A DNA stretch of 64,000 nucleotides, from IMG/VR virus record IMGVR_UViG_3300044957_000763, positions 414,841 to 478,840 of that record. One strand, given 5' to 3'. Below the pieces are notes generated by a model. That model searched no databases, was not told the DNA's origin, and was given only the letters and a program-made list of their open reading frames with translations. Both the position numbers and the translations under genes were made by a program. Numbering within the stretch: the first letter of the stretch is position 1; every line of letters begins with the position of its first letter. This document shows positions 56 to 54,459 of this stretch, in pieces.

Positions 56-820
56 ATGAACAAGCACTGGCCTATTGTTATCTACCCAGAGGTCGCTGCA
101 GCGGCGCTCAAAGCCAAAGTGCACGCCGCATATGCGGTATTCATAATTGTCAAAGTTTATGACTCACACAGAGGTGGTTCAGGTCTTGTATCTATCCGCG
201 AACTTGTCGAGATAGCGCAGAAAACACTTGGCGTTAGCAAAAGCCAGGCATATCGAGTCATTTCAGGTGGTATTGGTGTGTTTTGGAGGGAACCCAGGCA
301 CAAGACCGTGGGTTTGTTTTCTCACCTCAGGGCATATTACAATCTCGGTATTGAAATGTTTTCATCCAAGCCAATTCGTCTAACTGTTGCACAAATTGGA
401 TATGATTCAGAAAATTATAGTGGGTCTTACATTAAAGACCTGATGGTGAGTTGCGTGGCTTCTTGGGACAGCGGTTGTTCGGCAATTGCTGTTGAAACCA
501 TCGCGGAACTTACAGGGATTTCAACCAGAACAATACGGAGACAAATCAAGTATATGTCATGTCGCTCTAGTGGAATTGTCCTTGATGTTTCAACATGTTA
601 CAAAGTAAAGTGCGATAATATCAATCAGACAGAGGCCAACGCACGTGTTCAGCAATTGAATTCAAGCGGGATGGTTAAATATCATTCGGCCCCAAAAGAC
701 GGCAAGTTTGTAATACTTGAAAGAACTGGCAATCTATATAGTTTGAGTGGTGTGGAGCGACTTGGGAGGAGGCGCAGACACAGGCATCTGAAACATGTGT
801 CAAACTGGAGAAAAGACTAA
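56..820 (+). CDS. Putative DNA-binding protein with two HTH-like segments
   Basis: 254 aa ORF with two HTH-like stretches (SIRELVEIAQKTLGVSKSQAYRVI; AVETIAELTGISTRTIRRQIK) and a basic C-terminus; directly upstream of dnaE. Confidence 0.45.
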   Translation: MNKHWPIVIYPEVAAAALKAKVHAAYAVFIIVKVYDSHRGGSGLVSIRELVEIAQKTLGVSKSQAYRVISGGIGVFWREPRHKTVGLFSHLRAYYNLGIEMFSSKPIRLTVAQIGYDSENYSGSYIKDLMVSCVASWDSGCSAIAVETIAELTGISTRTIRRQIKYMSCRSSGIVLDVSTCYKVKCDNINQTEANARVQQLNSSGMVKYHSAPKDGKFVILERTGNLYSLSGVERLGRRRRHRHLKHVSNWRKD

Positions 821-821
821 C

Positions 822-3800
822 ATGTGTAACAGCAAACAGAATTTCGTACATCTGCACAACCACACTTGGTATTCAGTCCAGGACGCATTACCTTCACCGA
901 CTGACCTTGCAATGACCGCAAGAAAGGAGGGTTTTCCAGCCGTTGCTATCACAGACCATGGTCGAATGGGCGGATGTATTGAGTTCTTTGAGGCATGCAA
1001 CAAACCCGTTGACGGGTTAGACCCAATTAAGCCCATTCTTGGTTGTGAAATGTACGTTGTTCCAGACCGGTTTGATAAAGACATGGTCATTGATGAATAC
1101 GGTAACAAGCGAAGGAGAAAGACATGGCACTTGACCATGTTGGCCAAGAACCAAACTGGATACCGTAATCTACTAGCACTAAGCCGTCTTGGTGCAGAGC
1201 AAGACGCTTATCACTATTTTCCTCGAATTGACTGGGACATTATTACCCAGCACAGCGAGGGCGTTATATGCATGAGTGGATGCTTGGGTTCTGAGGTCAA
1301 TCAACAGTTATCTCGAGAAGATATTGATGGTGCAAGAGAGACGATGCGCCGATACAAAGAGGTATTTGGAGATGACTATTATGGTGAATTGCAGTATCAC
1401 GGTATTGATTTACAAAAACACAACTTGCCATTATTGCTTGATTTGTGCAAGGAATTAGACATCAAGACCGCATGCTCTAATGACATACACTATCTACAAA
1501 AAGAGCAGTGGGAACTGCACGATGTCTTGATTCATATGCGCGAATCGCTTACCAAGGATAATTCAGAGGTAAAGGAAAGCGGCAAGCGTGAAGCATACGG
1601 AAGCCACGAATTCTACATGAAAACAGAAGCACAAATGCGCAAGATGTTCGGCAAGGTAGAAGAATGCGTGGACAACACACTTGAAATTGCTGATAAAGTC
1701 GAGAATTTCATGCAAGCCAACGTGCCGCACATGTTGCCCAGTGCAGAGATTCCATTCAATGACCAAATGTTCAATGATTTCAAATCAAAGCACTATCCAT
1801 ACCACAGGCCAAACGAGGCATACTTGGCTTATCTTTCCATCACTGGACTAAAAGCACTTGGTTTAGCTGACAATCCTGTTTACAAGGCACGACTGAAGTA
1901 TGAGTTGACTACGGTCTGGAATATGGGTGTAACTGACTACTTCTTGATTCAGCGCGAGCTGGCTGAATTTATGAAACAGGCGCATATTCGATTTGGTATT
2001 CGTGGTTCTGGGGTCGCGAGCTTAATCAATTACTGCCTTGGAATCAGTGACATTGACCCGGTGCGCTGGAATCTTATGTTTGAGAGATTCCTCAATCCAG
2101 GTCGCGGCACTAAATACAAACTTGAATTCCCAGAAAAGCCAACAAAAGAATGGTTTGATGAACATGGCAAGCAACCTCAAGAAGAGGCGTGTGAAAGAAT
2201 CAAGACTGTTGCTAAGCAAGCAATAGCAGAAAACGCCGAACTCCGGCCGCTACAACCACAAATCCAAAAGGAAATCTGGGCGCTGGAAGGCCAAAAACTA
2301 GCCTCATATGTCTGCGACCTGGCCGATTCTGGTTTCAAAACCGACAAAAACACCCCGAATCTTTGGAGTGCGTATTTCTTGGGTATTACGCCAGAAAAAC
2401 CCAATGGTGATATGGTGGTTGGTCAGGTTGCGACGTTACCTGACGTTGATACTGACATTGATGACCGATATCGAGATACTGCCATTGAGTGGGCAAGAAG
2501 AAGGTTCGGAGACGAACATGTTGCCATTGTTGGTAACTGGGGTACATACGCAATCAAAGCCGCTGTTACTGCTTGTTTGAAGAGCTCGAAGAAGTTCCAG
2601 CAACGATATGGTGAAAAGTCGCATATTGTAGCACAATCAATCTCAAAATCTATTCCGGTTCAACCGGCTCACACGGAAGACCCAGAAGAGCCACTGGAGT
2701 TTGCGATTAAGCAAAACCCTGACTTGAACCAATATGTTAAGCAGTTCCCAGATGAGTTTGAGTCTGCCAGAAGATTGATAGGTGTAGTTTCCAATCTTGG
2801 CGTCCACGCTTCGGCTGTTGTTATTGCAAGCCAACCCATTAACTGGCACACACCACTTGAGCGCTCAAACAAAGGCGTGGTCACAGCCTACGACATGAAT
2901 GATGTTGAAAAGATAGGGATGGTCAAATACGACTTTCTGGGTTTGGCTATGCATCAAAAGATTGAACGTGCTTTGAAGTACATCAAGGAACGACACGGCA
3001 AAGACATTGACTTGCGCAACATTCCAATGGACGACAAAAAGGTCTTAAATCTCTTTAATGAAAAGAAAACCACCACGCTCTTCCAATTTGGCAGTGATGG
3101 CATGAAGGATTCTTTGAGCAAGGTACAAGTTAGCGATGTCGAAGACTTGATTGCCGTTGTGTCTTTGTTTAGACCAGGGCCACTTCAGTTTATTCCTGAC
3201 TATGCGTCATACAAGCGCAATCCTAATACTGTGCGCTATCCGCACGAAATCATCAAGCGACATCTTGGGGTTACATATGGCATTCCTGTATATCAAGAAC
3301 AAGTCATGCTTGTTTGCCGGGATATGGCAAATTTTGACCATGACGAGGTCGATAGCATGCGCAAAGCAGTGTCAAAGAAGAATCCTGTAGCTTTTGAAAA
3401 ATGCTGTAAGTTGTTTAAGGAAAAGGCCACCAAGGCAGGCATTGACGGAAAAATTGTTGACATGACACTGGAAAGCTGGAAGGGATTTGCAGGATACGCA
3501 TTTAACCGAGCGCATGCTGCGTCATATGCCATTTTGGCTTACCGTGGTGCATATCTAAGAGCGTACTATCCTGTTGAGTGGCTCGCAGCGTGTATACAGA
3601 CAGATATTACAGGAAACAAACAAGACAGGGTTGGAGACCATATTCATGAATGTGAATCAGAGCGACCACGAATTGTAGTATCTGGGCCAGATGTTAATAT
3701 ATCTAAACTCGAGGTATCAATTACTGAAAATGATGTCATAGTTCTACCACTCACATATATTAAGGGTATTGGTGCCAATGGATGTGAGTTCATGGACGGT

Positions 3801-4121
3801 GCTCCATACGAAGATGTCAAAGATTTCATCATACGTGGCGAACCGTCAAGAACGATGCTTCGCAACCTGGTAGAATCAGGTGCGCTCAGAAGTTTTCCTG
3901 ACTACAAAGGTGGCGACATTGATAGATTTATGGAACGTGTTGAGCCATATTATGTAGAACTAGACAGTATAAAACGTGAGGCAAAGAAGGCCGAGAAGCA
4001 ACGATACACCTCAATGTCACCATTGCAAAAAACCAGCACTGTAACCGCGAGGCCACTTCGGGCCGCCGGCAAGCCATTTAGGCCTAAGTCTAAGCCATCA
4101 ATTTTAGATAGTTTTGAGTGA
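822..4121 (+). CDS. dnaE: DNA polymerase III alpha subunit (family C), phage-encoded
   Basis: PHP motifs HLHNHTWYSVQD, AITDHG, GCEMY, CSNDIHY; IRGSGVAS; FERFLNP; catalytic PDVDTD; KYDFLGL; GIPVYQEQVM; YAFNRAHAASY. ORF track starts at 795; ATG 822 has GGAG at 807-810 and follows the stop at 820. Confidence 0.97.
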   Translation: MCNSKQNFVHLHNHTWYSVQDALPSPTDLAMTARKEGFPAVAITDHGRMGGCIEFFEACNKPVDGLDPIKPILGCEMYVVPDRFDKDMVIDEYGNKRRRKTWHLTMLAKNQTGYRNLLALSRLGAEQDAYHYFPRIDWDIITQHSEGVICMSGCLGSEVNQQLSREDIDGARETMRRYKEVFGDDYYGELQYHGIDLQKHNLPLLLDLCKELDIKTACSNDIHYLQKEQWELHDVLIHMRESLTKDNSEVKESGKREAYGSHEFYMKTEAQMRKMFGKVEECVDNTLEIADKVENFMQANVPHMLPSAEIPFNDQMFNDFKSKHYPYHRPNEAYLAYLSITGLKALGLADNPVYKARLKYELTTVWNMGVTDYFLIQRELAEFMKQAHIRFGIRGSGVASLINYCLGISDIDPVRWNLMFERFLNPGRGTKYKLEFPEKPTKEWFDEHGKQPQEEACERIKTVAKQAIAENAELRPLQPQIQKEIWALEGQKLASYVCDLADSGFKTDKNTPNLWSAYFLGITPEKPNGDMVVGQVATLPDVDTDIDDRYRDTAIEWARRRFGDEHVAIVGNWGTYAIKAAVTACLKSSKKFQQRYGEKSHIVAQSISKSIPVQPAHTEDPEEPLEFAIKQNPDLNQYVKQFPDEFESARRLIGVVSNLGVHASAVVIASQPINWHTPLERSNKGVVTAYDMNDVEKIGMVKYDFLGLAMHQKIERALKYIKERHGKDIDLRNIPMDDKKVLNLFNEKKTTTLFQFGSDGMKDSLSKVQVSDVEDLIAVVSLFRPGPLQFIPDYASYKRNPNTVRYPHEIIKRHLGVTYGIPVYQEQVMLVCRDMANFDHDEVDSMRKAVSKKNPVAFEKCCKLFKEKATKAGIDGKIVDMTLESWKGFAGYAFNRAHAASYAILAYRGAYLRAYYPVEWLAACIQTDITGNKQDRVGDHIHECESERPRIVVSGPDVNISKLEVSITENDVIVLPLTYIKGIGANGCEFMDGAPYEDVKDFIIRGEPSRTMLRNLVESGALRSFPDYKGGDIDRFMERVEPYYVELDSIKREAKKAEKQRYTSMSPLQKTSTVTARPLRAAGKPFRPKSKPSILDSFE

Positions 4122-6050: not shown

Positions 6051-7289
6051 ATGTCAAAAAATAACGAAAAGAAAGAAAGCCAAGACTTGGCACAGCGCAT
6101 AGAGGAGCGGAGAAAGGTCGTTGAGGCTCGCCAGAAGAAATTCGGAATCCCAAAGAGTACACTGTTGGTAGGCGGAGAGCACGAGAAGTATGATTTTGTA
6201 CCACTTGGTATTTCAGAAATCGACTCTAAACTCAAAACCAAAGCCATTACCGGAGAAGAGCAATTTGGACTATTGCGTGGCACTATAGTAGAGTTTTGCG
6301 GACCATCTATGTCTGGCAAAACATACGCCGCATATCATTTGGCCAAAGAGCATCAGAAACTTGGTCTTAGGGTACTCTTTGTAGATATTGAGCGCGGTTA
6401 CTATGAACCACGGGCTGTCCAGCTTGGGGTGAATATTGAAGACCCAGACCTTTGGGAAGTCCAGAAGGTTACATTTGCTGCAGGTACAGTTGGCGACTAT
6501 GTCGTTGAATGTGTCAATAGCGGCGATTACGGACTCATTATTGTTGACTCAATTGCCACTCTTATTCCAGATGCTGACTTTGAAAAGTCACTAGAAGACA
6601 ACGCTAAGGTGGGTGCTCACGCCATGTTCATGGGGCAGTTTTTGAGAAAACTTGTCTCGAGCAAAATGGAGGAGAACTTGACCACTGTAGTACTCATCAA
6701 CCAGTTCCGAACAGGTTCTGGTGCCATGCCAAACAGCTTTACAGACAAATCGTCTGGTGGCAAGGCTGTAGAATACTGGTCTCGTATCAGACTGTGGTTT
6801 GCCAGAATTGGCGGCAAAGATGGATGGGTAATAGACGGCAAGGGCAATCGCATTGGTGGTCGGTCTAGATGCACCATTTACAAAACAAAAACCGGAGGTC
6901 AGGACGAAATCGCAGAGTTCCCTGTGTATTTTGTGCCGGCTGACAATGATTTGGTAGGAGAGTTCCTTCACAGGACAATCAACAACAAGGACTTTGAGGG
7001 CATTGTAACACACACTGCACCTCGTGGCAGCCGCGAAAAGCTGTTCCGATATGTTGATGAGACTACTGGTGAACTTATTGCCACACCAAATAAGTATGAG
7101 TTCTGTATTGCGATGATGCACGCTAGTCCTCCCGAAAAGCGGCCGCGTACTGATAAATCAGATACTATGTTTGAGTACATGTGTGCTAGGCTGAAACTTA
7201 AAGAAGACCAGGTGGAAGCACTTGTAGAGCGCATCAAAAACCCGCCTGCTGATGACAATGACTCAGGTCTTGACAGTGAATCAGACTAA
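6051..7289 (+). CDS. recA: RecA/UvsX-family recombinase
   Basis: Walker A GPSMSGKT, Walker B LIIVDSIATL, VVLINQFR, SGGKAVEYWSRIRL. Confidence 0.93.
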   Translation: MSKNNEKKESQDLAQRIEERRKVVEARQKKFGIPKSTLLVGGEHEKYDFVPLGISEIDSKLKTKAITGEEQFGLLRGTIVEFCGPSMSGKTYAAYHLAKEHQKLGLRVLFVDIERGYYEPRAVQLGVNIEDPDLWEVQKVTFAAGTVGDYVVECVNSGDYGLIIVDSIATLIPDADFEKSLEDNAKVGAHAMFMGQFLRKLVSSKMEENLTTVVLINQFRTGSGAMPNSFTDKSSGGKAVEYWSRIRLWFARIGGKDGWVIDGKGNRIGGRSRCTIYKTKTGGQDEIAEFPVYFVPADNDLVGEFLHRTINNKDFEGIVTHTAPRGSREKLFRYVDETTGELIATPNKYEFCIAMMHASPPEKRPRTDKSDTMFEYMCARLKLKEDQVEALVERIKNPPADDNDSGLDSESD

Positions 7290-8037
7290 TGTCAATGGAC
7301 AGTCAATGATGGCATCTTTCTGCCAGTCGCTATCCCGTTCTCAGGGCGGGATGGCATATTTGGCAGAAAGAAACATTCCTGAATCGTTGGTTGAACAAGG
7401 AATGCTCGGATACATACCGCCATATTCCAGTCACTGGTTCCCATTATTGAAGGGCAGGCTAGTTACACCGATTTGCGATGCCACAGGCAACATCAAGGCA
7501 TTGGCAGGAAGACAGTTGCCGTTTGCAAGAGATTCTGTTGCCAAAGCATATCGAGAGTACAACTCAAGCAAACACGCGCAAGAACTGATTGACAAATGGG
7601 ACCGTGCAAAATGGATAAATGAACCATATCCAAAACGCAAACTGCTTTACAACCTGCACCGAGCCAAGAGTTTTGCGCGAGAGCGCGGATATATCAATCT
7701 GGTAGAGGGGTATCTAGACGCAGGGGTTTTGTCGTGTAAGCATATGGAAAACACAGCGGCTTTATGTGGCATCTCGTTAACAGAACATCATGCTGCGATA
7801 ATATCTAGATATTGCGATACCGTTGTGTTGCTTTATGATGGTGACCAAGCTGGTGTAGACGCCGGGGCTGAATCCAGAAGAGTTGCAGAACAATATGATT
7901 TGAAATGTCATGCAGTTTTGTTGCCAACTGGGTGGGACCCTGATGATTTTGTAGTGAAAAAGGGCGGCAAAAATTTACGCCGGGCTATTGAGGGGATGAT
8001 AGAAAGAAATGAGTATGAACTCGAAATCAAAATCTAA
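7252..8037 (+). CDS. dnaG: DnaG-type primase catalytic core (Toprim), lacking the zinc-binding domain
   Basis: YLAERNI, GRLVTPI..ALAGR, KWINEP, LYNLHRAK, LVEGYLD, AALCG, LLYDGDQAG, DPDDF; no CHC2 zinc ribbon. Start position uncertain. Confidence 0.88.
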   Translation: MTMTQVLTVNQTNVNGQSMMASFCQSLSRSQGGMAYLAERNIPESLVEQGMLGYIPPYSSHWFPLLKGRLVTPICDATGNIKALAGRQLPFARDSVAKAYREYNSSKHAQELIDKWDRAKWINEPYPKRKLLYNLHRAKSFARERGYINLVEGYLDAGVLSCKHMENTAALCGISLTEHHAAIISRYCDTVVLLYDGDQAGVDAGAESRRVAEQYDLKCHAVLLPTGWDPDDFVVKKGGKNLRRAIEGMIERNEYELEIKI

Positions 8038-9751
8038 AACAAAACTCCCGACCGAGTGGGTTTACAAAGATGCCGACTATGGCACCACGTTGCGACTTGC
8101 CAAAGACCTAAGAATGGTCAGGCCTGTGGCTGAAATCCTTGCTGGAAGGGGTTTTGAAGATGCGCACCAAGTGCGTGAATTCACCGAGTTTAACATTAGT
8201 CAGTTGCACAACCCGATGTTGCTACCAGACATGAAGCCTGCGCTCGATAGACTTGAGGCCGCTCTGGACGCAGAAGAAAGCATCTTTGTTTGGGGTGATT
8301 ATGATGTTGACGGAATCACATCAACTGCCATCATCATTCATGGAATCAGAATGCTAGGCGGAGAGGTTCATTATTACATACCACACCGCATTAAGGACGG
8401 CTATGACATTAAGCCAAAGGCAGTTGATATGGCATTAAGCAACAATTGTGGATTGTTGATGTCGGTTGATTGTGGGATTAAGGCATTAGAAGTTGGTGAA
8501 TATGCCAAAGAAAAAGGAATAGATTTGATTATTACTGACCACCACCACGCACGCACAGATGGGTTGATTCCTGAATGCATAGCAGTAATCAACCCAAATA
8601 GAATTGATGCAACATATCCTTTCAAGGGAATGGCTGGTTGTGGTATTGCGTTCAAGCTAATGGCTCAATTAGCCAAGAGAAGAAAGTTCAGTGTGCAAAA
8701 GATTTGCACTGAACTTTTAGAATATGTTGCACTAGGAACCATAGCAGACGTTGCTCCAATGTTAGATGAAAACCGATATATGGTTCATACAGGCTTGACG
8801 CTTATGGGTGATACGCAAAAAGCCGGCATGCGTGCTTTGTTAGATGAAGCCAATGTGAAGAACAGCGTCGACACAATGGCGGTGGGTTTCAGGCTTGGTC
8901 CGCGACTCAACGCAATGGGTCGAATTGGAGATGCCACAGATTCACTGCATTTAATTCTCGAACAAAACCCACATCATGCACGAAGACTTGCAGAACAGGC
9001 TAGTCGTCTAAACAAGAATCGCCAAAGCATGCAAGAGCAACAATTGCGCGAAGCTATTGCGCTAGTTGAAGAAGAACAGTTGGATAATGACATTATTGTT
9101 GTATCAAGCAACAATTGGCATCTTGGTGTTGTTGGTCTTATCGCGAGCCAACTAACACAAACATTTGGTCGACCGGCCATGGTTGGTGTTGATATGCCAA
9201 ATGGAGAAACGAAGGGTTCCTGTCGTTCATATAGAGATTTCCATATTCTCAATGCAATGGAGTCAGAAAATGTTCGAGGATTGTTTGTCAAGTACGGTGG
9301 CCACGCAATGGCTGCCGGATTTTCAATCAAGACTGACAAGATGCCAGAGCTTGTGGCTAATATCAATCAATATGCAAATGGTCAAGTCCCGGAAGAAAAA
9401 GCCAGAGTGATTGAAATTGACGCTGAAGTTATGTTCAATGAAGTTAACAACGCTTTGTACCTGGACTCCAAGAGGCTAGAACCATATGGCAACGGTCACT
9501 CATCTCCAATATTTGGGTGTGTTGAGGCATTGATTCACAAAATTGATACCATTGGTGAAAAACATTTGAAGTTGATATTCAAGGAACCCAATGGAAATCA
9601 AACCATTCAAGCAAGATGGTGGGGCAATGGGGCAAGAGTTAGTGAGTTTCCAGTAGGCAGTAAGGTCACAATTGCGTTCAAATTAGAGCATAGTGACTTC
9701 GGCGGTCAGGACTTTTTACAAATGACTGTTGAAGATATGAAATTGTTGTAG
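8009..9751 (+). CDS. recJ: ssDNA exonuclease RecJ (DHH family)
   Basis: GDYDVDG, SVDCGI, ITDHHH, LGTIADVAP, GPRLNAMGRI, KGSCRS, GGHAMAAG, LEPYGNG. Confidence 0.97.
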   Translation: MSMNSKSKSKTKLPTEWVYKDADYGTTLRLAKDLRMVRPVAEILAGRGFEDAHQVREFTEFNISQLHNPMLLPDMKPALDRLEAALDAEESIFVWGDYDVDGITSTAIIIHGIRMLGGEVHYYIPHRIKDGYDIKPKAVDMALSNNCGLLMSVDCGIKALEVGEYAKEKGIDLIITDHHHARTDGLIPECIAVINPNRIDATYPFKGMAGCGIAFKLMAQLAKRRKFSVQKICTELLEYVALGTIADVAPMLDENRYMVHTGLTLMGDTQKAGMRALLDEANVKNSVDTMAVGFRLGPRLNAMGRIGDATDSLHLILEQNPHHARRLAEQASRLNKNRQSMQEQQLREAIALVEEEQLDNDIIVVSSNNWHLGVVGLIASQLTQTFGRPAMVGVDMPNGETKGSCRSYRDFHILNAMESENVRGLFVKYGGHAMAAGFSIKTDKMPELVANINQYANGQVPEEKARVIEIDAEVMFNEVNNALYLDSKRLEPYGNGHSSPIFGCVEALIHKIDTIGEKHLKLIFKEPNGNQTIQARWWGNGARVSEFPVGSKVTIAFKLEHSDFGGQDFLQMTVEDMKLL

Positions 9752-9817: not shown

Positions 9818-10789
9818 TTGGAGATATCAGTGGCAACAAAAACAAAAAGCAACAATGAGACCGTTGCTACGGCATACTATGACCATGCTGAGCTAGAGTC
9901 TAAAATCTTAGCATACCAACAATCTCTTGTGGACAAAGACACAGTTTCACAGGAGCATTATTTCAAGAGCGTTTGTGATATTTACAAACCACATGAGTAC
10001 ATATCTAAGTGGTATGCACATTACAAGCATCTCTATGATTCACTAGAGGACTTCGAACAAGATTACATGCGTGTATTTTGTACCACGCTTGCGGCATGGA
10101 AGCCACGTCATTTACGCAAGCCGTCAAGGTATGGCGGTAAGGGTCATTTTCAGAATTTCTTCTGGGGTGCATTGTCTCACGCATACATTAACGGAGTTAA
10201 GTCAGAGGCTGCTGCTAAACGAAATCTTCAACAACAATGTCCGATATGCGGTGATTGGTGTAATCCTTTATCAACCCACTTGCTCAACAACCACATAGAC
10301 CTTCTGTGGGAGCGATTGAATGAAATGGGATATTCAATGACAGAATTAACTGGATGTCCATTTTGTCGTTCGTTCAAATTACCAAAACGCCAAGGACTTA
10401 GTGATGCAGAGTATAGAGAAAAAATTACTTCAACTCTGCGGAAACATATGGCATCAATGCACAGTTCTGTATTGTTCGAGACATTTCATGAAAAATTTCC
10501 TGAACATCTTACAGTAAGTGCAAAGGCTGTTTCTGTTTATATTCATGACTCAGATAATGAAGAGGAATCAAATGCATATGATGGATTTGAGTCTAGACCA
10601 GGCATAGACAATCTGATGTCGCTAGATTTGACACCACTGCAGATATTGATTATTGAGCGCATTCTAAATGAGGGATTGGTGAATTTACACTATGATGCGC
10701 ATTATGAATGCACAGAAGAAGAATTTCAAGATGCATTGAGCGGTCTGCAAGATGCATTAGTTATAGCCGGCATTGACACGGGTGTATAA
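9818..10789 (+). CDS. Sigma-70 region 2-like protein with two C2H2-type zinc fingers
   Basis: EDFEQDYMRVFCTTLAAWKP...GHFQNFFWGALSHAYINGVK resembles sigma region 2.2-2.4; CPIC-x9-H-x4-H and CPFC...H-x4-H; C-terminal LTPLQILIIERILNEG resembles the start of region 4. Confidence 0.5.
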   Translation: MEISVATKTKSNNETVATAYYDHAELESKILAYQQSLVDKDTVSQEHYFKSVCDIYKPHEYISKWYAHYKHLYDSLEDFEQDYMRVFCTTLAAWKPRHLRKPSRYGGKGHFQNFFWGALSHAYINGVKSEAAAKRNLQQQCPICGDWCNPLSTHLLNNHIDLLWERLNEMGYSMTELTGCPFCRSFKLPKRQGLSDAEYREKITSTLRKHMASMHSSVLFETFHEKFPEHLTVSAKAVSVYIHDSDNEEESNAYDGFESRPGIDNLMSLDLTPLQILIIERILNEGLVNLHYDAHYECTEEEFQDALSGLQDALVIAGIDTGV

Positions 10790-10791
10790 AT

Positions 10792-11190
10792 ATGAAAATA
10801 ATGACAAATCCTGAAAACAGCATTTCAGAAATTGAAGAGACCCCGGCAGTTGAACCAGGGCCAGGAAAAGACCCACAGGTCATAAGGGTTCGCGCAGGTG
10901 ACCCAAGAAGTGATGACCCTGACAAAAGACCAACAAATCCAGAAGGTCTATCCAGAAGTATATTGCATGTATTGAAAAAACATGACTACGTGCAAGTTTA
11001 CTCGGTAGGCCCAAAGGCACTGAATATCACCATGGCTGGATATCGTGGGGCCAAGGAGCGATTTACCAAGGTCTTAGATGGTTGGGTTTTGGTTTGTTCA
11101 CAATCAGAATATGTTGCTGAAATTGGTGGCAAAACCACGCTCGGAATCTGCACTCGAATTTATCCAATTCCAATCAAATTTGCTCAATAA
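10792..11190 (+). CDS. spoVS: SpoVS-family (Alba-like fold) protein
   Basis: VIRVRA...TNPEGLSRSILHVLKKHDYVQVYSVGPKALN...LVCSQSEYVAEIGG matches the SpoVS pattern (vlkVs..snp.svAgaia.vl....veiqaiGagAlNq...lic.p.f..ieidg). Confidence 0.75.
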   Translation: MKIMTNPENSISEIEETPAVEPGPGKDPQVIRVRAGDPRSDDPDKRPTNPEGLSRSILHVLKKHDYVQVYSVGPKALNITMAGYRGAKERFTKVLDGWVLVCSQSEYVAEIGGKTTLGICTRIYPIPIKFAQ

Positions 11191-11638: not shown

Positions 11639-11695
11639 AAGAACACAACGCAATAGCGAGCTCGCAATGGAGCAAAAAAAGAAGTGATAAAAACA

Positions 11696-14389
11696 ATGCC
11701 TACAGAATCTGAATCATCAACCCAGTCATATGCGCATCACCCTGTGCCGCAATTTACTATAGCGCAAGTACTTGCAAGTAGTATTGAGTATTTTGGTGGT
11801 GACGAAATGGCCGCCACCACATTCGCCAACAAATATGCACTACAGACCAGTCTTGGTGGTGCTACGCCATATTGTGAACTTAACCCCAACGATATGCATG
11901 ACCGAATTGCTCGAGAATTACATCGTGTAGAGAGCAAATATCCTAACCCAAGAAATTACAAAGAGTTTCGAGATGCCCTTCAGGGGTTTGAGAAAATTGT
12001 ACCTCAGGGTTCTCCAATGTACGGAATTGGCAACCCATACGCTATTGTGTCTTTATCAAACTGTGTTGTTGTAGAAAGCCCAGAAGACAACATGTCGTCA
12101 ATTTTTGAGGCCGGTAAGGAGCTGGCTAATCTCTATAAGCGACGTGCTGGTGTAGGCTTGTCGCTTGATACGTTGCGGCCGGAGAATGCGCCTGTTAGCA
12201 ATGCTGCTAAGGCGTCTACCGGTGCGTGGTCGTTTGCAGATTTCTATTCTAATGTCACAAGAATGGTTGGTCAAGCAGGCCGGCGCGGTGCGTTGATGTT
12301 AACGATGAACATGTTGCACCCAGACGTGCACAAGTTTATTGGCATGAAACAAGACATCAGTAATGTGACCGGCGCTAATGTTTCAGTAATGCTTGGCGAC
12401 TCATTCATGAATGCGGCGACTACGCCTGGTGCGGAATGGATTACCAGATGGTCTCAGGATAAAAATATCCAAATGACCGATGAAGAAGTTGAAGAATTGC
12501 TTGCTCTCGGAGGAGAGTGGGTTTATGCAGGGGTGTCAGTGCCGACATTGCGCGACACTGATGAGGCGCATCCAATCTTGAACACATGGACGTGGAAGTC
12601 ATCCAGTCCTGATTTTCCAAGACTCACTTCATTTAGAAAGTTTGTAGCTTCTGAACTGTGGGAGTTTCTCAATCGTTGTGCCAGAAATACTGCAGAACCA
12701 GGATTGCTTTTCTGGGACAACTATGGCAGAGAACTCCCTGCTAACTATTACCCAGGATTCAAGAGCACGTCTACCAATCCATGTAGTGAAATCGCCCTGA
12801 GCCCATACGACTCTTGTCGATTAACTTCTTTGAACCTTAAAGGATTTGTAAAGAATCCATTTACTCCAGATGCGTACTTTGATTTTGAGGAGTTTTCAAA
12901 TTACGTGCGACTTGGCATGAGGGTCATGGACAACATTGTTGACCTTGAAATTGAGTGCCTGCAGAATATCATTAACATGATATCTGAAGAGGATGAAAAG
13001 GTTCTATGGGGCAAGTTACTTAGTGCCGCAAAGAACGGTCGAAGAACTGGCCTTGGAACGCATGCACTTGGTGACACATTGGCCTGCCTTTGCTTGAGAT
13101 ATGACAGCGATGAGGCGATTGCACAAGTTAACAGCATTTACAATTGTTTGAGAGACAACGCGTATCGAGAAAGCGTAAATCTAGCCAAAGAGCGCGGGTG
13201 CTTCCCGGTTTATGATTGGGAGACAGAAAAGAACTGTCCGTTTATTCAAAGGTTGCCAAGTGACATCAATGAAGATATGAGACAACATGGCCGTCGAAAC
13301 ATTAGCTTGTTGACCAATGCGCCAACTGGTAGCGTGTCTATTGTTTCGCGCACAAGTTCTGGTATTGAGCCGACATTCAGGCACTTCTATGTGCGACGAC
13401 AGAAAATCAATCCAAACGACGCTGATGCTCGAGTGGATTTCAAGGACGCAAGCGGTGATTCTTGGCAACACTTTGATGTGTTTGAGCGCAATATGCAAGA
13501 ATTCTTTGAATTCAATCCAGAAATAAAGGCTAAGTGGAATGAAGTTTATCAGAAGTCACCGCACAAGGATTTTGCTGACAACATGCAGTTCTGGACGGAT
13601 GAACTGAACAAAATCTTGCCAGATTACTTTGTTTATGCAGAGATGATTGACCCGCTTCAGCGAGTTAGATTACAAGGCGTGCTCCAATCATATATTGACC
13701 ACGGTGTTTCATCTACAATCAATATGAACCAAGACGTAACATCAGACTACGTTCGTGGGATTTACGAAGAAGCGTGGCGATGTGGTCTGAAGGGGGTTAC
13801 TGTCTATAGAGACAAATCACGAAGCGGCGTTCTGGTTACCAGTACAGACAGCAAAGCACCAACCGGAATTGTGGAACATGATGCTCCGAAGCGACCGGAA
13901 ATTCTACCGTGTCACATTGAGCGCGCCACAGTAGAAGGTGAAAAATGGACTATCTTTGTTGGTTTACTTGATGGCAAGCCATATGAAATTTTTGGTGGAT
14001 TGGCAGAAAACATTGAGATTCCAAAGAAGTATACTACTGGCTACATTCGCAAACGCAAGTGTGAAAAACGAGAAAACACAGACGAAAATTCTAAGCGAAA
14101 AGCATGTTATGACCTTGTCGCCGGCGACGAAGACGACCCACTGGTTATCAAAGATGTAGTTGTCAACTTCAATGATGACAAATATGGTTGGGGCACCAGG
14201 ATGCTATCGACCATGTTGCGCCACGGTGTACCACTTAAGTACATTGTTGAACAACTACGGCGCAGTTATGCCACATCGTTGCATTCGTTTAACAAGGCCA
14301 TGGCAAGGGTATTGGCAAAATACGACGATGTTGGTGGTATTGGTGAAATCGAAAGACCAGACAACTGCAGAACAGGAAACTGCGAGTAA
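11696..14389 (+). CDS. nrdJ: Class II (adenosylcobalamin-dependent) ribonucleotide reductase
   Basis: SLSNCVV, RRGALM, GANVSV, TNPCSEI, RRTGLG, NAPTGSVS, SGIEP, HGVSSTIN; C-terminal KRPEILPC..GKPYEIF (TSCPD-like) domain; no NrdB-like gene in the window. Confidence 0.88.
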   Translation: MPTESESSTQSYAHHPVPQFTIAQVLASSIEYFGGDEMAATTFANKYALQTSLGGATPYCELNPNDMHDRIARELHRVESKYPNPRNYKEFRDALQGFEKIVPQGSPMYGIGNPYAIVSLSNCVVVESPEDNMSSIFEAGKELANLYKRRAGVGLSLDTLRPENAPVSNAAKASTGAWSFADFYSNVTRMVGQAGRRGALMLTMNMLHPDVHKFIGMKQDISNVTGANVSVMLGDSFMNAATTPGAEWITRWSQDKNIQMTDEEVEELLALGGEWVYAGVSVPTLRDTDEAHPILNTWTWKSSSPDFPRLTSFRKFVASELWEFLNRCARNTAEPGLLFWDNYGRELPANYYPGFKSTSTNPCSEIALSPYDSCRLTSLNLKGFVKNPFTPDAYFDFEEFSNYVRLGMRVMDNIVDLEIECLQNIINMISEEDEKVLWGKLLSAAKNGRRTGLGTHALGDTLACLCLRYDSDEAIAQVNSIYNCLRDNAYRESVNLAKERGCFPVYDWETEKNCPFIQRLPSDINEDMRQHGRRNISLLTNAPTGSVSIVSRTSSGIEPTFRHFYVRRQKINPNDADARVDFKDASGDSWQHFDVFERNMQEFFEFNPEIKAKWNEVYQKSPHKDFADNMQFWTDELNKILPDYFVYAEMIDPLQRVRLQGVLQSYIDHGVSSTINMNQDVTSDYVRGIYEEAWRCGLKGVTVYRDKSRSGVLVTSTDSKAPTGIVEHDAPKRPEILPCHIERATVEGEKWTIFVGLLDGKPYEIFGGLAENIEIPKKYTTGYIRKRKCEKRENTDENSKRKACYDLVAGDEDDPLVIKDVVVNFNDDKYGWGTRMLSTMLRHGVPLKYIVEQLRRSYATSLHSFNKAMARVLAKYDDVGGIGEIERPDNCRTGNCE

Positions 14390-17135: not shown

Positions 17136-17804
17136 TTGAATTACGACGAAACACGTCTGATGTTATTGGTAAATAGGGCTCGTGGTGGCGACGAAGCGGC
17201 TTTTAATGAATTAATGCGCATTTTTGAACCTGAACTGCGCATGATTGCACAGAGGCTTTATATTGCTGGGTCGGATATTAATGATGTATTGCAAGAAACA
17301 TACATAGGACTCTGGCGTGCCGTCCTTGATTATCGAGACGACGCAGGTACATCATTCCACAACTTCGCCATAAATGTTTGTTGTAAACGCAGGGTCTACA
17401 CTGCCATTAAGGCAAGTAACGGCAAAAAGTTCAAAATCCACAACACGGCTGAAAGTCTTGACAGGTCTATAGTCACAGACGATGACGACAGTGGCCAAAC
17501 CCTGGCAGATTTCATTGTTGACCATAGTCCATCGCCGTTAGATATGATTGTCAACAAGTTAGAATATACGGATAATGTTTCAGAACTGCATTCAAAGATG
17601 ACTGGCATGGAGCAAACTGTATTCGACAGTTTCACAAAAGACCACACTTACGAAGAAATTGGTAAAGAATTAGACATTAAACCCAAAGCAGCAGACAATG
17701 CACTTATGCGCATCAGAAAGAAGGCTGCAAAAATCTACACAGAGTACAATTCAGAAGAACCCAACCCTGTCAAAAAGCCGAGGCGAAAAAACAAGTCAAA
17801 ATAG
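17136..17804 (+). CDS. sigH: SigH (Spo0H)-like RNA polymerase sigma factor
   Basis: ARGGDEAAFNEL, DINDVLQETYIGLWRAVLDY, SFHNFA..CCKRRVYTAIKASNGKK..HNTAESLD, YEEIGKEL..KPKAADNALMRIRKK: close to the SigH pattern (incl. IDNALQRVKRK). TTG start. Confidence 0.85.
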   Translation: MNYDETRLMLLVNRARGGDEAAFNELMRIFEPELRMIAQRLYIAGSDINDVLQETYIGLWRAVLDYRDDAGTSFHNFAINVCCKRRVYTAIKASNGKKFKIHNTAESLDRSIVTDDDDSGQTLADFIVDHSPSPLDMIVNKLEYTDNVSELHSKMTGMEQTVFDSFTKDHTYEEIGKELDIKPKAADNALMRIRKKAAKIYTEYNSEEPNPVKKPRRKNKSK

Positions 17805-20108: not shown

Positions 20109-20720
20109 GTGAGAACAAGGCACTACGAATACATAGATGAGTTAGTTGTACGCGCAAAAAATGGCGACGATAACGCCTTGTTGTTGATTATTGACTTCTA
20201 TCAACCGCTACTCAAAACATCCATAAAGTATTGTGTCTCTAGATACCCGCTCGCCGCGAGATACACTGAAGACATTGAGGCAGACCTATATCTCATAATG
20301 CGCGAATTAGTTCGGCAATATGATGCAGAACTGTCATTTTTTTCCTACTTCTTGTCAACTCGTATTGACTTCGTGCTTCAAACACATGTGCGTAAAAATT
20401 ATCTCGACAGCAGTGTTGGCGGAAGGAGGCCTAGTGAAATTTTCATCGAGGATATGCCAGAAGACTGGGAACCATTCGTAGACCAAGACCCGGTTGGCAA
20501 AATTATTGCAAGTGCTGATATTTCTTCAGCGCTTTTGAAACTTGAAGACAGGTATAGAACTGCGGTTCAGTTGTACTTTTTTGAGGGTATGAACCAGCAA
20601 CAAGCGGCTGAACACTTATCCATTACACAGTCTTCATTTTCAAAAAGGCTTAACAAGGCACTAGAGCAATTAAGAGATTTTATGACTGATTTCGAAAAAA
20701 CTCTTATCACAAAGGAATAA
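20109..20720 (+). CDS. Sigma-70 family RNA polymerase sigma factor (regions 2 and 4 only)
   Basis: LVVRAKNGDDNAL, EDIEADLYL...YDAELSFFSY; region 4 LEDRYRTAVQLYFFEGMNQQQAAEHLSITQSSFSKRLNKALEQLR. Confidence 0.88.
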   Translation: MRTRHYEYIDELVVRAKNGDDNALLLIIDFYQPLLKTSIKYCVSRYPLAARYTEDIEADLYLIMRELVRQYDAELSFFSYFLSTRIDFVLQTHVRKNYLDSSVGGRRPSEIFIEDMPEDWEPFVDQDPVGKIIASADISSALLKLEDRYRTAVQLYFFEGMNQQQAAEHLSITQSSFSKRLNKALEQLRDFMTDFEKTLITKE

Positions 20721-54162: not shown

Positions 54163-54459
54163 TTAGCCTTCGGTAGTGCTTGTGTGTGTGGTCTGAACAT
54201 TGGGCAAAAATATAATCTTGCCTGATTGTGGGTCAAATTCTGGCATCTCGCTTTCTTCCAATCCAAATGGGTCTACATAATATGCTTTGAAACCATCTGT
54301 CAGCTTTTTCTCAAAAAACTGTTTGGCGCGGTCTACATCATATTCATCACCGATGTTAAACTCAAATAAAGTGTCTCTACTCTCATTCAATTCGCGCATA
54401 ATCAGCCTACTGGTCACCTGTATGGATTCCATACATATTATAGCATAAGTTGGCGCCAA
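54163..54459 (-). CDS. Hypothetical protein
   Basis: Acidic ORF in the minus-strand island; true start probably internal. Confidence 0.45.
   Translation of the reverse strand: MAPTYAIICMESIQVTSRLIMRELNESRDTLFEFNIGDEYDVDRAKQFFEKKLTDGFKAYYVDPFGLEESEMPEFDPQSGKIIFLPNVQTTHTSTTEG

What the first reader, a model, noticed from the sequence alone, without database searches (positions are those of the whole stretch)
9818..10789. Probable sigma factor with two C2H2-type zinc fingers inserted between regions 2 and 4
Seen: an N-terminal segment aligns by eye to sigma-70 region 2 (EDFEQDYMRVFCTTLAAWKP ~ EDLIQEG.IGL..A..KFDP; GHFQNFFWGALSHAYINGVK ~ FSTYA.WWIR.AI...I). Two zinc-finger-like units follow (CPIC-x9-H-x4-H; CPFC-long spacer-H-x4-H), then a degenerate region-4-like tail. 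Inference: a sigma whose -35 reader is replaced or supplemented by zinc fingers, which could explain a -10-only or unusual promoter class. With 17136 and 20109 this would give three sigma-like genes within 11 kb.
Basis: partly seen in the sequence, partly recalled or inferred. Interest (0 to 1): 0.75.

Follow-up and report, generated by a model that had tools for sequence, protein, structure and literature searches.

The report
Phage sigma factor carrying zinc fingers
A 479-kb phage encodes a very divergent RNA-polymerase sigma factor in which two zinc fingers replace the usual middle domain, an arrangement I could not find described, so it may recognise promoters in an unusual way.

Summary
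The ORF is real (likely start GTG 9830, 319 aa) and lies in the replication module of a 478,840-bp phage that has no RNA polymerase of its own. Both Cys2His2 sets are invariant in 17 orthologues and essentially so in a 36-member alignment. The window's own protein hits no Pfam or PDB sequence model. Remote evidence still converges on a sigma-70-family factor. Profile-profile comparison matches the N-domain to sigma region 2 and the C-domain to the acidic linker plus region 4. One relative reaches Sigma70_r2 at 23.9 bits against a cut-off of 24.0. Exhaustive structural search returns almost only sigma factors (SigB Z 9.7). The N-domain is predicted to dock on the beta-prime clamp helices (score 0.76, best of 3 controls 0.00). 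The fingers (zf-Di19-like C2H2) occupy the place of sigma domain 3, not of region 4. Region 4 is kept but is strongly acidic here (net -11). A SpoVS-family gene is adjacent in 7 of 7 contexts. Function as a sigma, zinc binding and any DNA reading by the fingers are inferred, not shown. I judge it a new variant of a known kind.

The parts
9830..10789 (+). Gene for the sigma-like zinc-finger protein. The mechanical ORF starts at TTG 9818. The likely start is GTG 9830, giving 319 aa.
   Evidence: ORF. GGAG at 9820-9823 lies 6 nt before the GTG. Orthologues of 316-320 aa begin at the aligned position. 59 representative clusters were found in 1.84 billion proteins.
9820..9823 (+). Shine-Dalgarno-like GGAG ahead of the GTG start
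   Evidence: Read directly from the sequence.
9884..10222 (+). Sigma-2-like domain (residues 23-135). It has five helices. Helix 76-93 is the region 2.1/2.2 equivalent and helix 111-135 is the region 2.3/2.4 equivalent.
   Evidence: hhalign P=1.2e-4 (probability 55%) against the phage's own sigma family and P=3.4e-3 against short cellular sigmas; reversed controls score 10-16. 100 column shuffles reach at most 19.3 against 33.2 observed. VIA Z 9.7 to S. aureus SigB (2.7 A over 90 residues); all four chains with Z>=8 are sigma factors. Relative P0037 hits Sigma70_r2 at E=3.7e-5. Predicted docking on the beta-prime clamp helices scores 0.76 against 0.00 for controls. pLDDT is 94-98.
10229..10327 (+). 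Zinc finger 1 (residues 138-170): C141-x2-C144-x9-H154-x4-H159, a beta-hairpin followed by a helix
   Evidence: Ligands are invariant or nearly so. DSSP shows E139-140, E147-148 and H151-158. Weak hits to zf-C2H2_4 and zf-Di19. ZFAT C2H2 finger at E=0.22.
10349..10495 (+). Zinc finger 2 (residues 178-226): C180-x2-C183-x26-H210-x4-H215, with a loop of variable length (10 to more than 40 residues in relatives)
   Evidence: Ligands are invariant or nearly so. zf-Di19 matches 8 of 36 members, and two reach the gathering score. ZFAT finger at E=0.33. pLDDT is 93-96.
10496..10597 (+). Acidic, disordered linker (residues 227-260, net charge -6). It is the equivalent of the sigma region 3.2 / sigma2-sigma4 linker.
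   Evidence: pLDDT is below 50 for 234-259 in both models. hhalign aligns 'HDSDNEEESNAYDGFE' with the 'DDDDSGQTLADFIVD' linker motif of the phage sigma and 'EEDAQLGEMLED' of cellular sigmas. Charge.
10598..10771 (+). Sigma-4-like helix-turn-helix domain (residues 261-318). It is strongly acidic in this clade (net -11 over 263-323).
   Evidence: hhalign of the C-part gives P=8.6e-4 against the phage sigma family and P=5.2e-3 against cellular sigmas, in the 4.1/4.2 register. VIA Z 5.1-5.5 and 2.3-2.7 A to SigF, SigA, SigD and SigE region-4 structures. Relative P0063 hits Sigma70_r4_2 at E=0.0097 at the aligned place. Charge.
10792..11190 (+). Co-conserved SpoVS-family small gene (132 aa), starting 2 nt after the stop codon. 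It is a candidate partner of the sigma-like protein.
   Evidence: Pfam SpoVS E=0.029. Atlas SpoVS clusters at 0.92/0.90/0.89. Adjacent in 7 of 7 contexts, including relatives about 20-25% identical.
17136..17804 (+). Canonical sigma factor of the same module (regions 2 and 4)
   Evidence: Sigma70_r2 E=5.4e-9 and Sigma70_r4_2 E=6.8e-5.
20109..20720 (+). Second canonical sigma-like gene (strong region 4, ECF-like)
   Evidence: Sigma70_r4 E=1.9e-10 and Sigma70_ECF E=0.0017.

Best explanation
The gene encodes a highly divergent member of the sigma-70 superfamily made by a huge phage that relies on the host RNA polymerase. The layout is: sigma-2 domain (23-135), two tandem Cys2His2 zinc fingers of the Di19/C2H2 kind (138-226), a disordered acidic linker (227-260), and a sigma-4 domain (261-318). 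The fingers plus linker occupy the place and length of sigma domain 3 plus region 3.2 in group-3 sigmas. Proposed mechanism, all inferred: helix 76-93 (the region 2.2 equivalent) clamps onto the beta-prime clamp helices. The conserved aromatic/polar helix F111-x-N-Y/F-F-W...N125..K128 (the region 2.3/2.4 equivalent) captures the -10-like element and melts DNA. The acidic linker threads toward the RNA exit path as region 3.2 does. The sigma-4 domain sits on the beta flap. In this clade the sigma-4 domain is too acidic to read a -35 box, so upstream specificity, if there is any, would come from the zinc-finger module near the spacer or extended -10 position, or from a partner protein. The gene sits at the end of the replication module, just before terminase and portal, with two canonical sigma genes. 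It therefore probably takes part in the switch to late transcription. The adjacent, always co-conserved SpoVS-family protein is a candidate cofactor.
For: Shown: the ORF is conserved and under constraint. The phage has no RNAP beta or beta-prime. N-domain to sigma region 2: hhalign P=1.2e-4, 3.4e-3 and 6e-4 against independent profiles, with reversed and shuffled controls far below. C-domain to linker plus region 4: P=8.6e-4 and 5.2e-3. The finger block matches nothing in sigma (P 0.27-0.73). Bridging Pfam hits: P0037 to Sigma70_r2 at E=3.7e-5, 23.9 bits against a cut-off of 24.0; P0063 to Sigma70_r4_2 at E=0.0097. ESM-Atlas features: rank 2 is a viral cluster with 100% Sigma70_r2 (0.94, 170 shared features), and all named neighbours are sigma or HTH. 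Fold: about 45 of the top 50 Foldseek PDB hits are sigma chains (best probability 0.94, E 0.02). The Foldseek-independent search of 48,161 chains finds only four chains with Z>=8, all sigma factors (SigB 9.7, pro-SigK 8.7, SigI6 8.4, SigW 8.1), plus sigma-4 hits for residues 261-318. The AFDB hit at rank 2 is a sigma-70-family cluster (E 8.7e-3, probability 0.99); rank 1 (E 1.5e-3, probability 1.00) is unnamed. Docking: the complex model supports binding of residues 20-137 to the beta-prime clamp helices. The score is 0.76 and the best of 3 controls is 0.00. That mark was reached by 51 of 78 solved complexes and 2 of 108 mismatched pairs. The interface uses target 74-92 plus 37-50 and beta-prime 356-383, which are the clamp helices and their tip. 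The region 2.2- and 2.3/2.4-equivalent residues are conserved family-wide. Terminase and portal follow the sigma cluster.
Against: The window's own protein hits no Pfam, PHROG or PDB sequence model. The narrow alignment gives no hhalign signal. All sequence-level sigma evidence is remote (hhalign probabilities 23-55%), and no Foldseek E-value reaches 1e-3. Z values of 8-10 for helical domains can reflect a common helix arrangement, as the tool's note warns. The docking pass may reflect remembered sigma/clamp-helix complexes, so it shows likeness rather than binding. The beta-prime fragment came from a tentative, not proven, host lineage. The best PDB sequence hit of the wide profile is a TRIM24 bromodomain (E=0.0017), not a sigma. 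The finger block is near neutral and lacks conserved basic residues, and the sigma-4 domain is net -11. DNA reading by either part is therefore unproven. No cognate promoter motif was found.
Confidence: 0.68

Rival explanations
1. It is a sigma-derived RNA-polymerase-binding regulator rather than an initiating sigma. It would occupy the beta-prime clamp helices and beta flap to displace or block host sigma (a decoy or appropriator), or it would act only together with another phage sigma or with the SpoVS-like partner.
For: The sigma-4-like domain has net charge -11 and its recognition helix has no basic residues. The finger block is neutral. The phage already has four canonical sigma-like genes. 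Docking to the clamp helices fits a decoy as well as a true sigma. A partner gene is always adjacent.
Against: The region 2.3/2.4-equivalent aromatic/polar cluster (F111, N113, Y/F114, F115, W/Y/F116, N125, K128, R135) is conserved down to about 20% identity. A pure clamp-helix blocker would not need it. Distant members have a basic sigma-4 domain (+3 to +4) with a Sigma70_r4_2 hit.
Confidence: 0.17
2. It is a zinc-finger DNA-binding or replication accessory protein whose helical flanks only resemble sigma domains. Examples would be a Di19-like transcription factor, or a zinc-binding module supplied in trans to the DnaG-type primase, which lacks one.
For: The gene lies between RecJ and ribonucleotide reductase in a replication module. 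The primase (7252-8037) shows no zinc-binding domain in Pfam. The zf-Di19 matches are the only ones that reach a Pfam gathering score.
Against: Two separate flanking domains match sigma-2 and sigma-4 in the correct order by profile, by fold and by language-model features. Clamp-helix docking is predicted with clean controls. Nothing links the protein to primase.
Confidence: 0.08
3. The N-terminal helical domain is a bromodomain-like bundle rather than a sigma-2 domain.
For: hmmsearch of the 36-member profile against PDB sequences gives TRIM24/TIF1-alpha bromodomain as the best hit (E=0.0017, query 47-123), while SigB scores only E=3.3.
Against: Only this one protein is hit, out of the many bromodomains in the PDB. 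No family member hits Pfam Bromodomain even at E<=1-10. The acetyl-lysine-binding Asn aligns with non-conserved residues (alignment). No bromodomain appears in the top 50 of either exhaustive structural search, and sigma-2 domains dominate them. To my knowledge, bromodomains are eukaryotic.
Confidence: 0.02

Closest known systems
Group-3 alternative sigma factors (SigB, SigF, sigma-28, SigI type) of the sigma-70 family
   Same: The domain order is sigma-2, a middle module, an acidic linker and sigma-4. They are the best structural matches (SigB Z 9.7, SigI6 8.4). The clamp-helix interface is predicted on the region 2.2 equivalent.
   Different: The three-helix sigma-3 domain is replaced by two Cys2His2 zinc fingers (no profile match to sigma). 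The sequence is below Pfam thresholds. The sigma-4 domain is acidic in this clade.
ECF (group 4) sigmas with metal- or Cys-rich modules: ECF52 (zinc-finger extension, PMC5826349), OrbS (Cys-rich extension, PMC9023288), CorE type (from memory)
   Same: They are sigma-70-family proteins that carry an on-board Cys/His metal site. SigW is a close fold match for the N-domain (Z 8.1, 2.6 A over 90 residues).
   Different: By the papers' abstracts and my own knowledge, those modules are added as C-terminal extensions that regulate activity, and none is a C2H2 pair. Here the fingers are internal, between sigma-2 and sigma-4.
T4 gp55 late sigma (with gp33 and the gp45 sliding clamp)
   Same: It is a very divergent phage sigma-2-like protein and a fold match (7d7d_F, Z 7.0-7.2). 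It is encoded alongside replisome and clamp genes and depends on a small co-factor. The constant SpoVS-like neighbour invites the analogy.
   Different: From my knowledge, gp55 has no sigma-4 and no zinc fingers. The target keeps a sigma-4 fold. No evidence links it to the sliding clamp.
zf-Di19 (PF05605) and classical C2H2 or UBZ-type fingers
   Same: The ligand set is Cys2His2 with a CPxC knuckle. Finger 1 has the beta-hairpin plus helix. Eight of 36 members match zf-Di19 and two reach the gathering score. Weak matches to ZFAT C2H2 fingers and UBZ fingers.
   Different: The Cys-His spacer is shorter (9-10 against 12, the classical figure from memory). Finger 2 has a loop of variable length. 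The window's own copy is below threshold. The fingers are embedded in a sigma factor of a bacterial virus.

Membership tests
Sigma-70 family | Region 2 (sigma-2 domain) recognisable by sequence (Pfam Sigma70_r2) | tested here: inconclusive
   The window protein has no hit even at E<=10. Family member P0037 scores E=3.7e-5 and 23.9 bits against a cut-off of 24.0 at the aligned position. hhalign gives P=1.2e-4 to 1.3e-2 against three sigma profiles, with clean controls.
Sigma-70 family | Sigma-2 helical-bundle fold | tested here: met
   The AF2 model has pLDDT 94-98 in residues 20-135. VIA gives Z 9.7 (SigB, 2.7 A over 90 residues), 8.4 (SigI6), 8.1 (SigW) and 7.9 (SigA domain 2). All chains with Z>=8 are sigma factors. 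This rests on predicted, not experimental, structure.
Sigma-70 family | Binding of region 2.2 to the beta-prime clamp helices | tested here: met
   This is prediction only. The complex model scores 0.76 and the best of 3 controls scores 0.00. The mark was reached by 51 of 78 solved complexes and 2 of 108 mismatched pairs. The interface is target 74-92 plus 37-50 with beta-prime 356-383. It may reflect memory of solved sigma complexes.
Sigma-70 family | Region 4 helix-turn-helix (sigma-4 domain) | tested here: inconclusive
   Fold Z is 5.1-5.5 at 2.3-2.7 A to SigF, SigA, SigD and SigE region 4. hhalign gives P=8.6e-4 and 5.2e-3. P0063 hits Sigma70_r4_2 at E=0.0097. The window copy has no Pfam hit and a net charge of -11.
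Sigma-70 family | Conserved aromatic/polar residues of region 2.3/2.4 for -10 recognition and melting | tested here: inconclusive
   A conserved F-x-N-Y/F-F-W...N..K...KRN helix is present. Residue-by-residue equivalence to Y430/W433/W434 of E. coli sigma-70 (numbering from memory) is not established.
Sigma-70 family | Promoter-specific initiation with core RNA polymerase | not testable with these tools
   This needs in vitro transcription or transcription-start mapping.
Group-3 sigma | Sigma-3 domain (regions 3.0/3.1, three-helix bundle) | tested here: not met
   Residues 138-226 give no profile match to sigma (P 0.27-0.73). They are modelled as two zinc-finger units.
ECF (group 4) sigma | Sigma-2 and sigma-4 joined by a short linker only | tested here: not met
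   About 125 residues, including an 89-residue structured finger block (pLDDT 93-96), lie between the two domains.
C2H2 / zf-Di19 zinc finger | Cys2His2 ligand set, conserved | tested here: met
   Both sets are invariant in 17 sequences and invariant or at least 90% conserved in 36.
C2H2 / zf-Di19 zinc finger | Sequence match to the family model | tested here: inconclusive
   The window copy scores E=7.7 for zf-Di19 and 0.61 for zf-C2H2_4. Eight of 36 members match zf-Di19 at E<=0.05. P0058 (27.6 bits) and P0066 (28.6 bits) reach the cut-off of 27.5.
C2H2 / zf-Di19 zinc finger | Beta-beta-alpha fold and zinc binding | tested here: inconclusive
   Finger 1 is modelled as a hairpin plus helix. 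Finger 2 shows the helix but no strands. Zinc content is not testable here.
T4 gp55 family | Sigma-2-only protein without region 4 | tested here: not met
   The target has a sigma-4-fold C-domain. The fold match to gp55 is Z 7.0-7.2.
Ros/MucR prokaryotic zinc finger | Ros/MucR domain (same C-x2-C-x9-H-x4-H spacing, recalled from memory) | tested here: not met
   No ROS_MUCR hit in any Pfam scan. No Ros structure appears among the fold-search rows shown.

The most novel reading that the evidence does not exclude
The zinc-finger pair is a new DNA-reading head inside a sigma factor. It would sit where sigma-3 contacts the spacer and extended -10 region and read a phage-specific upstream element, while the acidic sigma-4 only anchors to the beta flap. 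The always-adjacent SpoVS-family protein would act as an obligatory co-factor, analogous to gp33. That would define a new promoter architecture and a new two-component sigma system in huge phages.
Probability: 0.25. Interest if true: 0.85.

Novelty: new variant of a known kind. Interest (0 to 1): 0.62.

Why it matters
Sigma factors are modular, but all the described modules that read DNA are helical (sigma-2, sigma-3, sigma-4). A conserved phage lineage that swaps sigma-3 for a Cys2His2 finger pair would add a new building block to bacterial promoter recognition. It would give a handle on how uncultivated huge phages time their late genes. It could also supply orthogonal parts for synthetic transcription control. 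The invariant pairing with a SpoVS-family protein may give the first functional clue for the many phage-encoded SpoVS-like proteins. It is also a case where standard annotation (Pfam, PHROGs, BLAST) returns nothing, although the protein can be placed by combined remote-homology, fold and docking evidence.

Tried and rejected
Direct searches of the window protein against Pfam, PHROGs and PDB sequences gave only noise. tblastn against 50,697 phage records found no match.

The narrow 17-sequence profile gave no hhalign signal against sigma. Only the wide alignment did.

Single-sequence hhalign against the genome's other sigma genes was weak: P 0.02-0.4, although the registers were consistent.

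Ros/MucR has the same ligand spacing (from memory), but no Pfam or fold support was found, so I rejected it.

The idea of a primase zinc-binding domain supplied in trans was rejected, because both flanks are sigma-like and dock on beta-prime.

A bromodomain came up as the best PDB sequence hit of the wide profile (E=0.0017). I judged it a chance match for the reasons given under the rivals.

Phage G gp300 was a viral fold hit at rank 3. It is an ordinary sporulation-type sigma (PMC12484599), not a relative of this architecture.

The promoter hunt found an extended -10 / leaderless-like class and a GC-rich hairpin repeat. Neither can be assigned to this protein, and reading the TG of an extended -10 normally needs region 3.0, which the protein lacks.

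Literature searches found no description of a sigma with internal C2H2 fingers. The library covers open-access papers only.

Full report
What is there. The window is the last 64 kb of a 478,840-bp virus record with direct terminal repeats. Its first 22 kb is a replication module on the + strand: DnaE-type polymerase (795-4121), RecA (6051), a DnaG-type primase (7252), RecJ (8009-9751), the target ORF (9818-10789), a small SpoVS-like ORF (10792-11190), class II ribonucleotide reductase (11684-14389), clamp loader (15455), a canonical sigma factor (17136), beta clamp (17867) and a second sigma-like gene (20109). Terminase large subunit (22290) and portal (42540) follow. The genome has no RNA polymerase beta or beta-prime, so the phage must use the host enzyme. 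It carries four canonical sigma-like genes and one copy of the target family.

The observation. The probable start is the GTG at 9830, 6 nt after a GGAG, which matches the 'MATKTK' N-termini of the 319-aa orthologues. Residue numbers below follow the 323-aa ORF from 9818. Sixteen close homologues and 59 representative clusters in 1.84 billion proteins define a family. The Atlas clusters that share its architecture are all viral. All eight ligands (C141, C144, H154, H159; C180, C183, H210, H215) are invariant in 17 sequences. They are invariant or at least 90% conserved in 36 sequences down to about 16-20% identity. The spacer of finger 2 varies from 10 to more than 40 residues, and in some relatives it contains a further Cys cluster.

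Is it a sigma factor? The window's own protein gives nothing against Pfam, PHROGs or PDB sequences. Six independent kinds of remote evidence nevertheless agree.

(1) Profile-profile comparison. The wide family profile matches the family of the phage's own canonical sigma over exactly the Sigma70_r2 span (target 47-135, P=6e-4, score 33.2). Reversed profiles score 13.5-15.9, and 100 column shuffles reach at most 19.3. When the family is cut into three pieces, the N-part matches sigma-2 at P=1.2e-4 (probability 55%) against the phage sigma family and at P=3.4e-3 against short cellular sigmas. The C-part matches the sigma C-terminus at P=8.6e-4 and P=5.2e-3. The finger block matches nothing (P 0.27-0.73). 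Reversed controls score 7-16. The registers are the expected ones: EDFEQDY aligns with DLIQEG, the acidic 'DSDNEEESNAYDGFE' aligns with the acidic linker before region 4, 'LTPLQILIIERIL' aligns with region 4.1, and the last helix aligns with the 4.2 recognition helix.

(2) Bridging Pfam hits in distant members. P0037 hits Sigma70_r2 at E=3.7e-5 and 23.9 bits against a cut-off of 24.0. P0063 hits Sigma70_r4_2 at E=0.0097. Both hits fall at the aligned positions.

(3) Language-model features. Rank 2 is a viral cluster that is 100% Sigma70_r2 (score 0.94, 170 shared features). Every named neighbour is a sigma or an HTH protein.

(4) Fold. With AF2 models of pLDDT 75.8 and 85.1, about 45 of the top 50 Foldseek PDB hits are sigma chains, although the best E-value is only 0.02. 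The Foldseek-independent search of 48,161 chains finds only four chains with Z>=8, and all are sigma factors: SigB 9.7 (2.7 A over 90 residues), pro-SigK 8.7, SigI6 8.4 and SigW 8.1. Residues 261-318 separately match sigma-4 structures at Z 5.1-5.5. In the AFDB fold clusters rank 1 is unnamed (E 1.5e-3, probability 1.00) and rank 2 is a sigma-70-family cluster (E 8.7e-3, probability 0.99); in BFVD the best hits are phage sigma factors.

(5) Docking. The complex model supports binding of residues 20-137 to the beta-prime clamp helices. The beta-prime fragment came from an Armatimonadota MAG that carries a syntenic phage segment. The score is 0.76 and the best of 3 controls is 0.00. That mark was reached by 51 of 78 solved complexes and 2 of 108 mismatched pairs. 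The interface uses helix 74-92 and residues 37-50 of the target, and the clamp helices with their tip on beta-prime. A pass of this kind shows likeness to solved sigma complexes, not binding.

(6) Conservation. The region 2.2-like residues are conserved family-wide: D74, E/D77, D78, F79 (33 of 33) and F87 (31 of 33). So is the region 2.3/2.4-like helix: F111, N113, Y/F114, F115, W/Y/F116, N125, K128, K134, R135 and N136. This argues for a working sigma-2 domain.

Anatomy and mechanism. The finger block (89 residues) plus the disordered acidic linker (34 residues, pLDDT below 50 in both models) has the position and size of sigma-3 plus region 3.2 in group-3 sigmas. The fingers therefore replace sigma-3, not sigma-4. 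The fingers are of the C2H2 kind. Finger 1 is modelled as a hairpin plus helix. Eight of 36 members match zf-Di19, and two reach its gathering score. Each finger also weakly matches a ZFAT C2H2 finger. The sigma-4-like domain has net charge -11 in the window's clade but +3 to +4 in distant members. The finger block is about neutral, and apart from the ligands and two prolines it has no family-wide conserved residues. My best reading is a true sigma that binds host core polymerase through sigma-2 and sigma-4, reads a -10-like element, has lost -35 reading in this clade, and uses the finger module either as a structural stand-in for sigma-3, as a DNA-reading head near the spacer, or as a docking site for a partner. 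I put about 0.9 on descent from the sigma-70 family, about 0.68 on function as an initiating sigma, and about 0.25-0.35 on DNA reading by the fingers.

Partner gene. A SpoVS-family gene is immediately adjacent in 7 of 7 contexts examined. In the window it starts 2 nt after the stop codon. In two loci it overlaps the sigma-like gene, and in one it is convergent. These contexts include relatives only about 20-25% identical to the target. Such a deeply conserved pair suggests a functional partnership (cofactor, chaperone or anti-sigma), which I could not test.

Rivals. A sigma-derived decoy or appropriator fits the acidic sigma-4 and the presence of four other sigmas, but not the conserved melting helix. 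A replication or zinc-finger transcription-factor role fits the neighbourhood and the primase that lacks a zinc-binding domain, but not the two sigma-like flanks. A bromodomain-like N-domain is suggested by one PDB sequence hit (TRIM24, E=0.0017). It is contradicted by the lack of any Pfam Bromodomain hit, by the hit being confined to one protein, and by the structural searches.

Novelty. Zinc- or Cys-bearing sigmas in the papers found (ECF52, OrbS) and CorE-type sigmas (from memory) carry their metal modules as added, C-terminal extensions. T4 gp55 lacks sigma-4. I found no description of a sigma with an internal C2H2 pair in place of sigma-3 (open-access literature only). I rate it a new variant of a known kind.

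Noticed in passing
window 10792-11190 (+); L001 11012-11389; L002 11067-11537; L003 10866-11240; L047 1281-1715 (-); L048 1729-2028; L049 7061-7642: A SpoVS-family small protein is encoded next to the sigma-like zinc-finger gene in 7 of 7 contexts, across relatives down to about 20-25% identity. It is a deeply conserved gene pair of unknown meaning. The window copy has a long, Pro-rich N-terminal extension.
   Followed up: partly
window 7252-8037 (+): The DnaG-type primase (261 aa; DNAG_N and Toprim) shows no N-terminal zinc-binding domain in Pfam. Its orthologues in L001, L003 and L049 are equally short. How template recognition is achieved is unclear.
   Followed up: no
G000 genome-wide, e.g. 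32645(-), 157703(-)/157708(+), 258659(-)/258681(-); in the window at 54445 (-): TGnTATAAT (often TGTGCTATAAT) occurs 55 times against about 27 expected. About 25 sites have an ATG 0-8 nt after the hexamer. This suggests extended -10 promoters that drive leaderless or near-leaderless mRNAs. They are probably read by the host primary sigma, not by the target.
   Followed up: partly
G000:C1 about 320,000-370,000 (+), outside the window: About 55 copies of a stereotyped GC-rich element, (C)CGGCCCCGGA, lie almost all on the + strand. It is often followed by a loop, TCCGGGGC and a T-run. Many copies form intrinsic-terminator hairpins between small genes, and others lack the second arm.
   Followed up: no
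alignment A2: P0012-P0018, P0014, P0015; and P0037, P0038, P0041-P0043, P0049, P0051, P0053: Some relatives carry extra Cys clusters. One is a C...C-x2-C set inside the loop of finger 2. Another subgroup has a C-x2-C-x6-8-C set between the region 4.1- and 4.2-like helices. This would give possible third zinc sites.
   Followed up: no
L001 (NCBI GCA_018268375.1, contig JAFDWS010000002.1, 167,821-188,819 of 1,363,254 bp): A syntenic copy of the whole replication module lies near one end of a 1.36-Mb contig of an Armatimonadota MAG. If the MAG's longest contig in the tool's numbering is this record, ABC-transporter genes occur on it only beyond about 365 kb. This is either an integrated huge prophage or a chimeric join, and it is the only host hint.
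   Followed up: partly
G000:C1:23786-23899 (-), outside the window (L041): A 262-aa ORF gives a weak match (E=0.0185) to the finger-1 part of the family profile. It may be another protein with a similar zinc finger.
   Followed up: no
L002 13468-18433: In the most distant syntenic relative (596-kb contig), the ribonucleotide reductase carries intein and LAGLIDADG insertions, and a deaminase and an ART-PolyVal gene lie in the module. The window's reductase has no intein hit.
   Followed up: no
window 29728-37236 (+): A 2,502-aa ORF lies in the late region between terminase and portal. It was not annotated here.
   Followed up: no
G000:C1:284029-284097 (+), outside the window (L044): A 129-aa ORF gives a weak Sigma70_r4 match (E=0.0014). 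It may be a stand-alone region-4-like protein.
   Followed up: no
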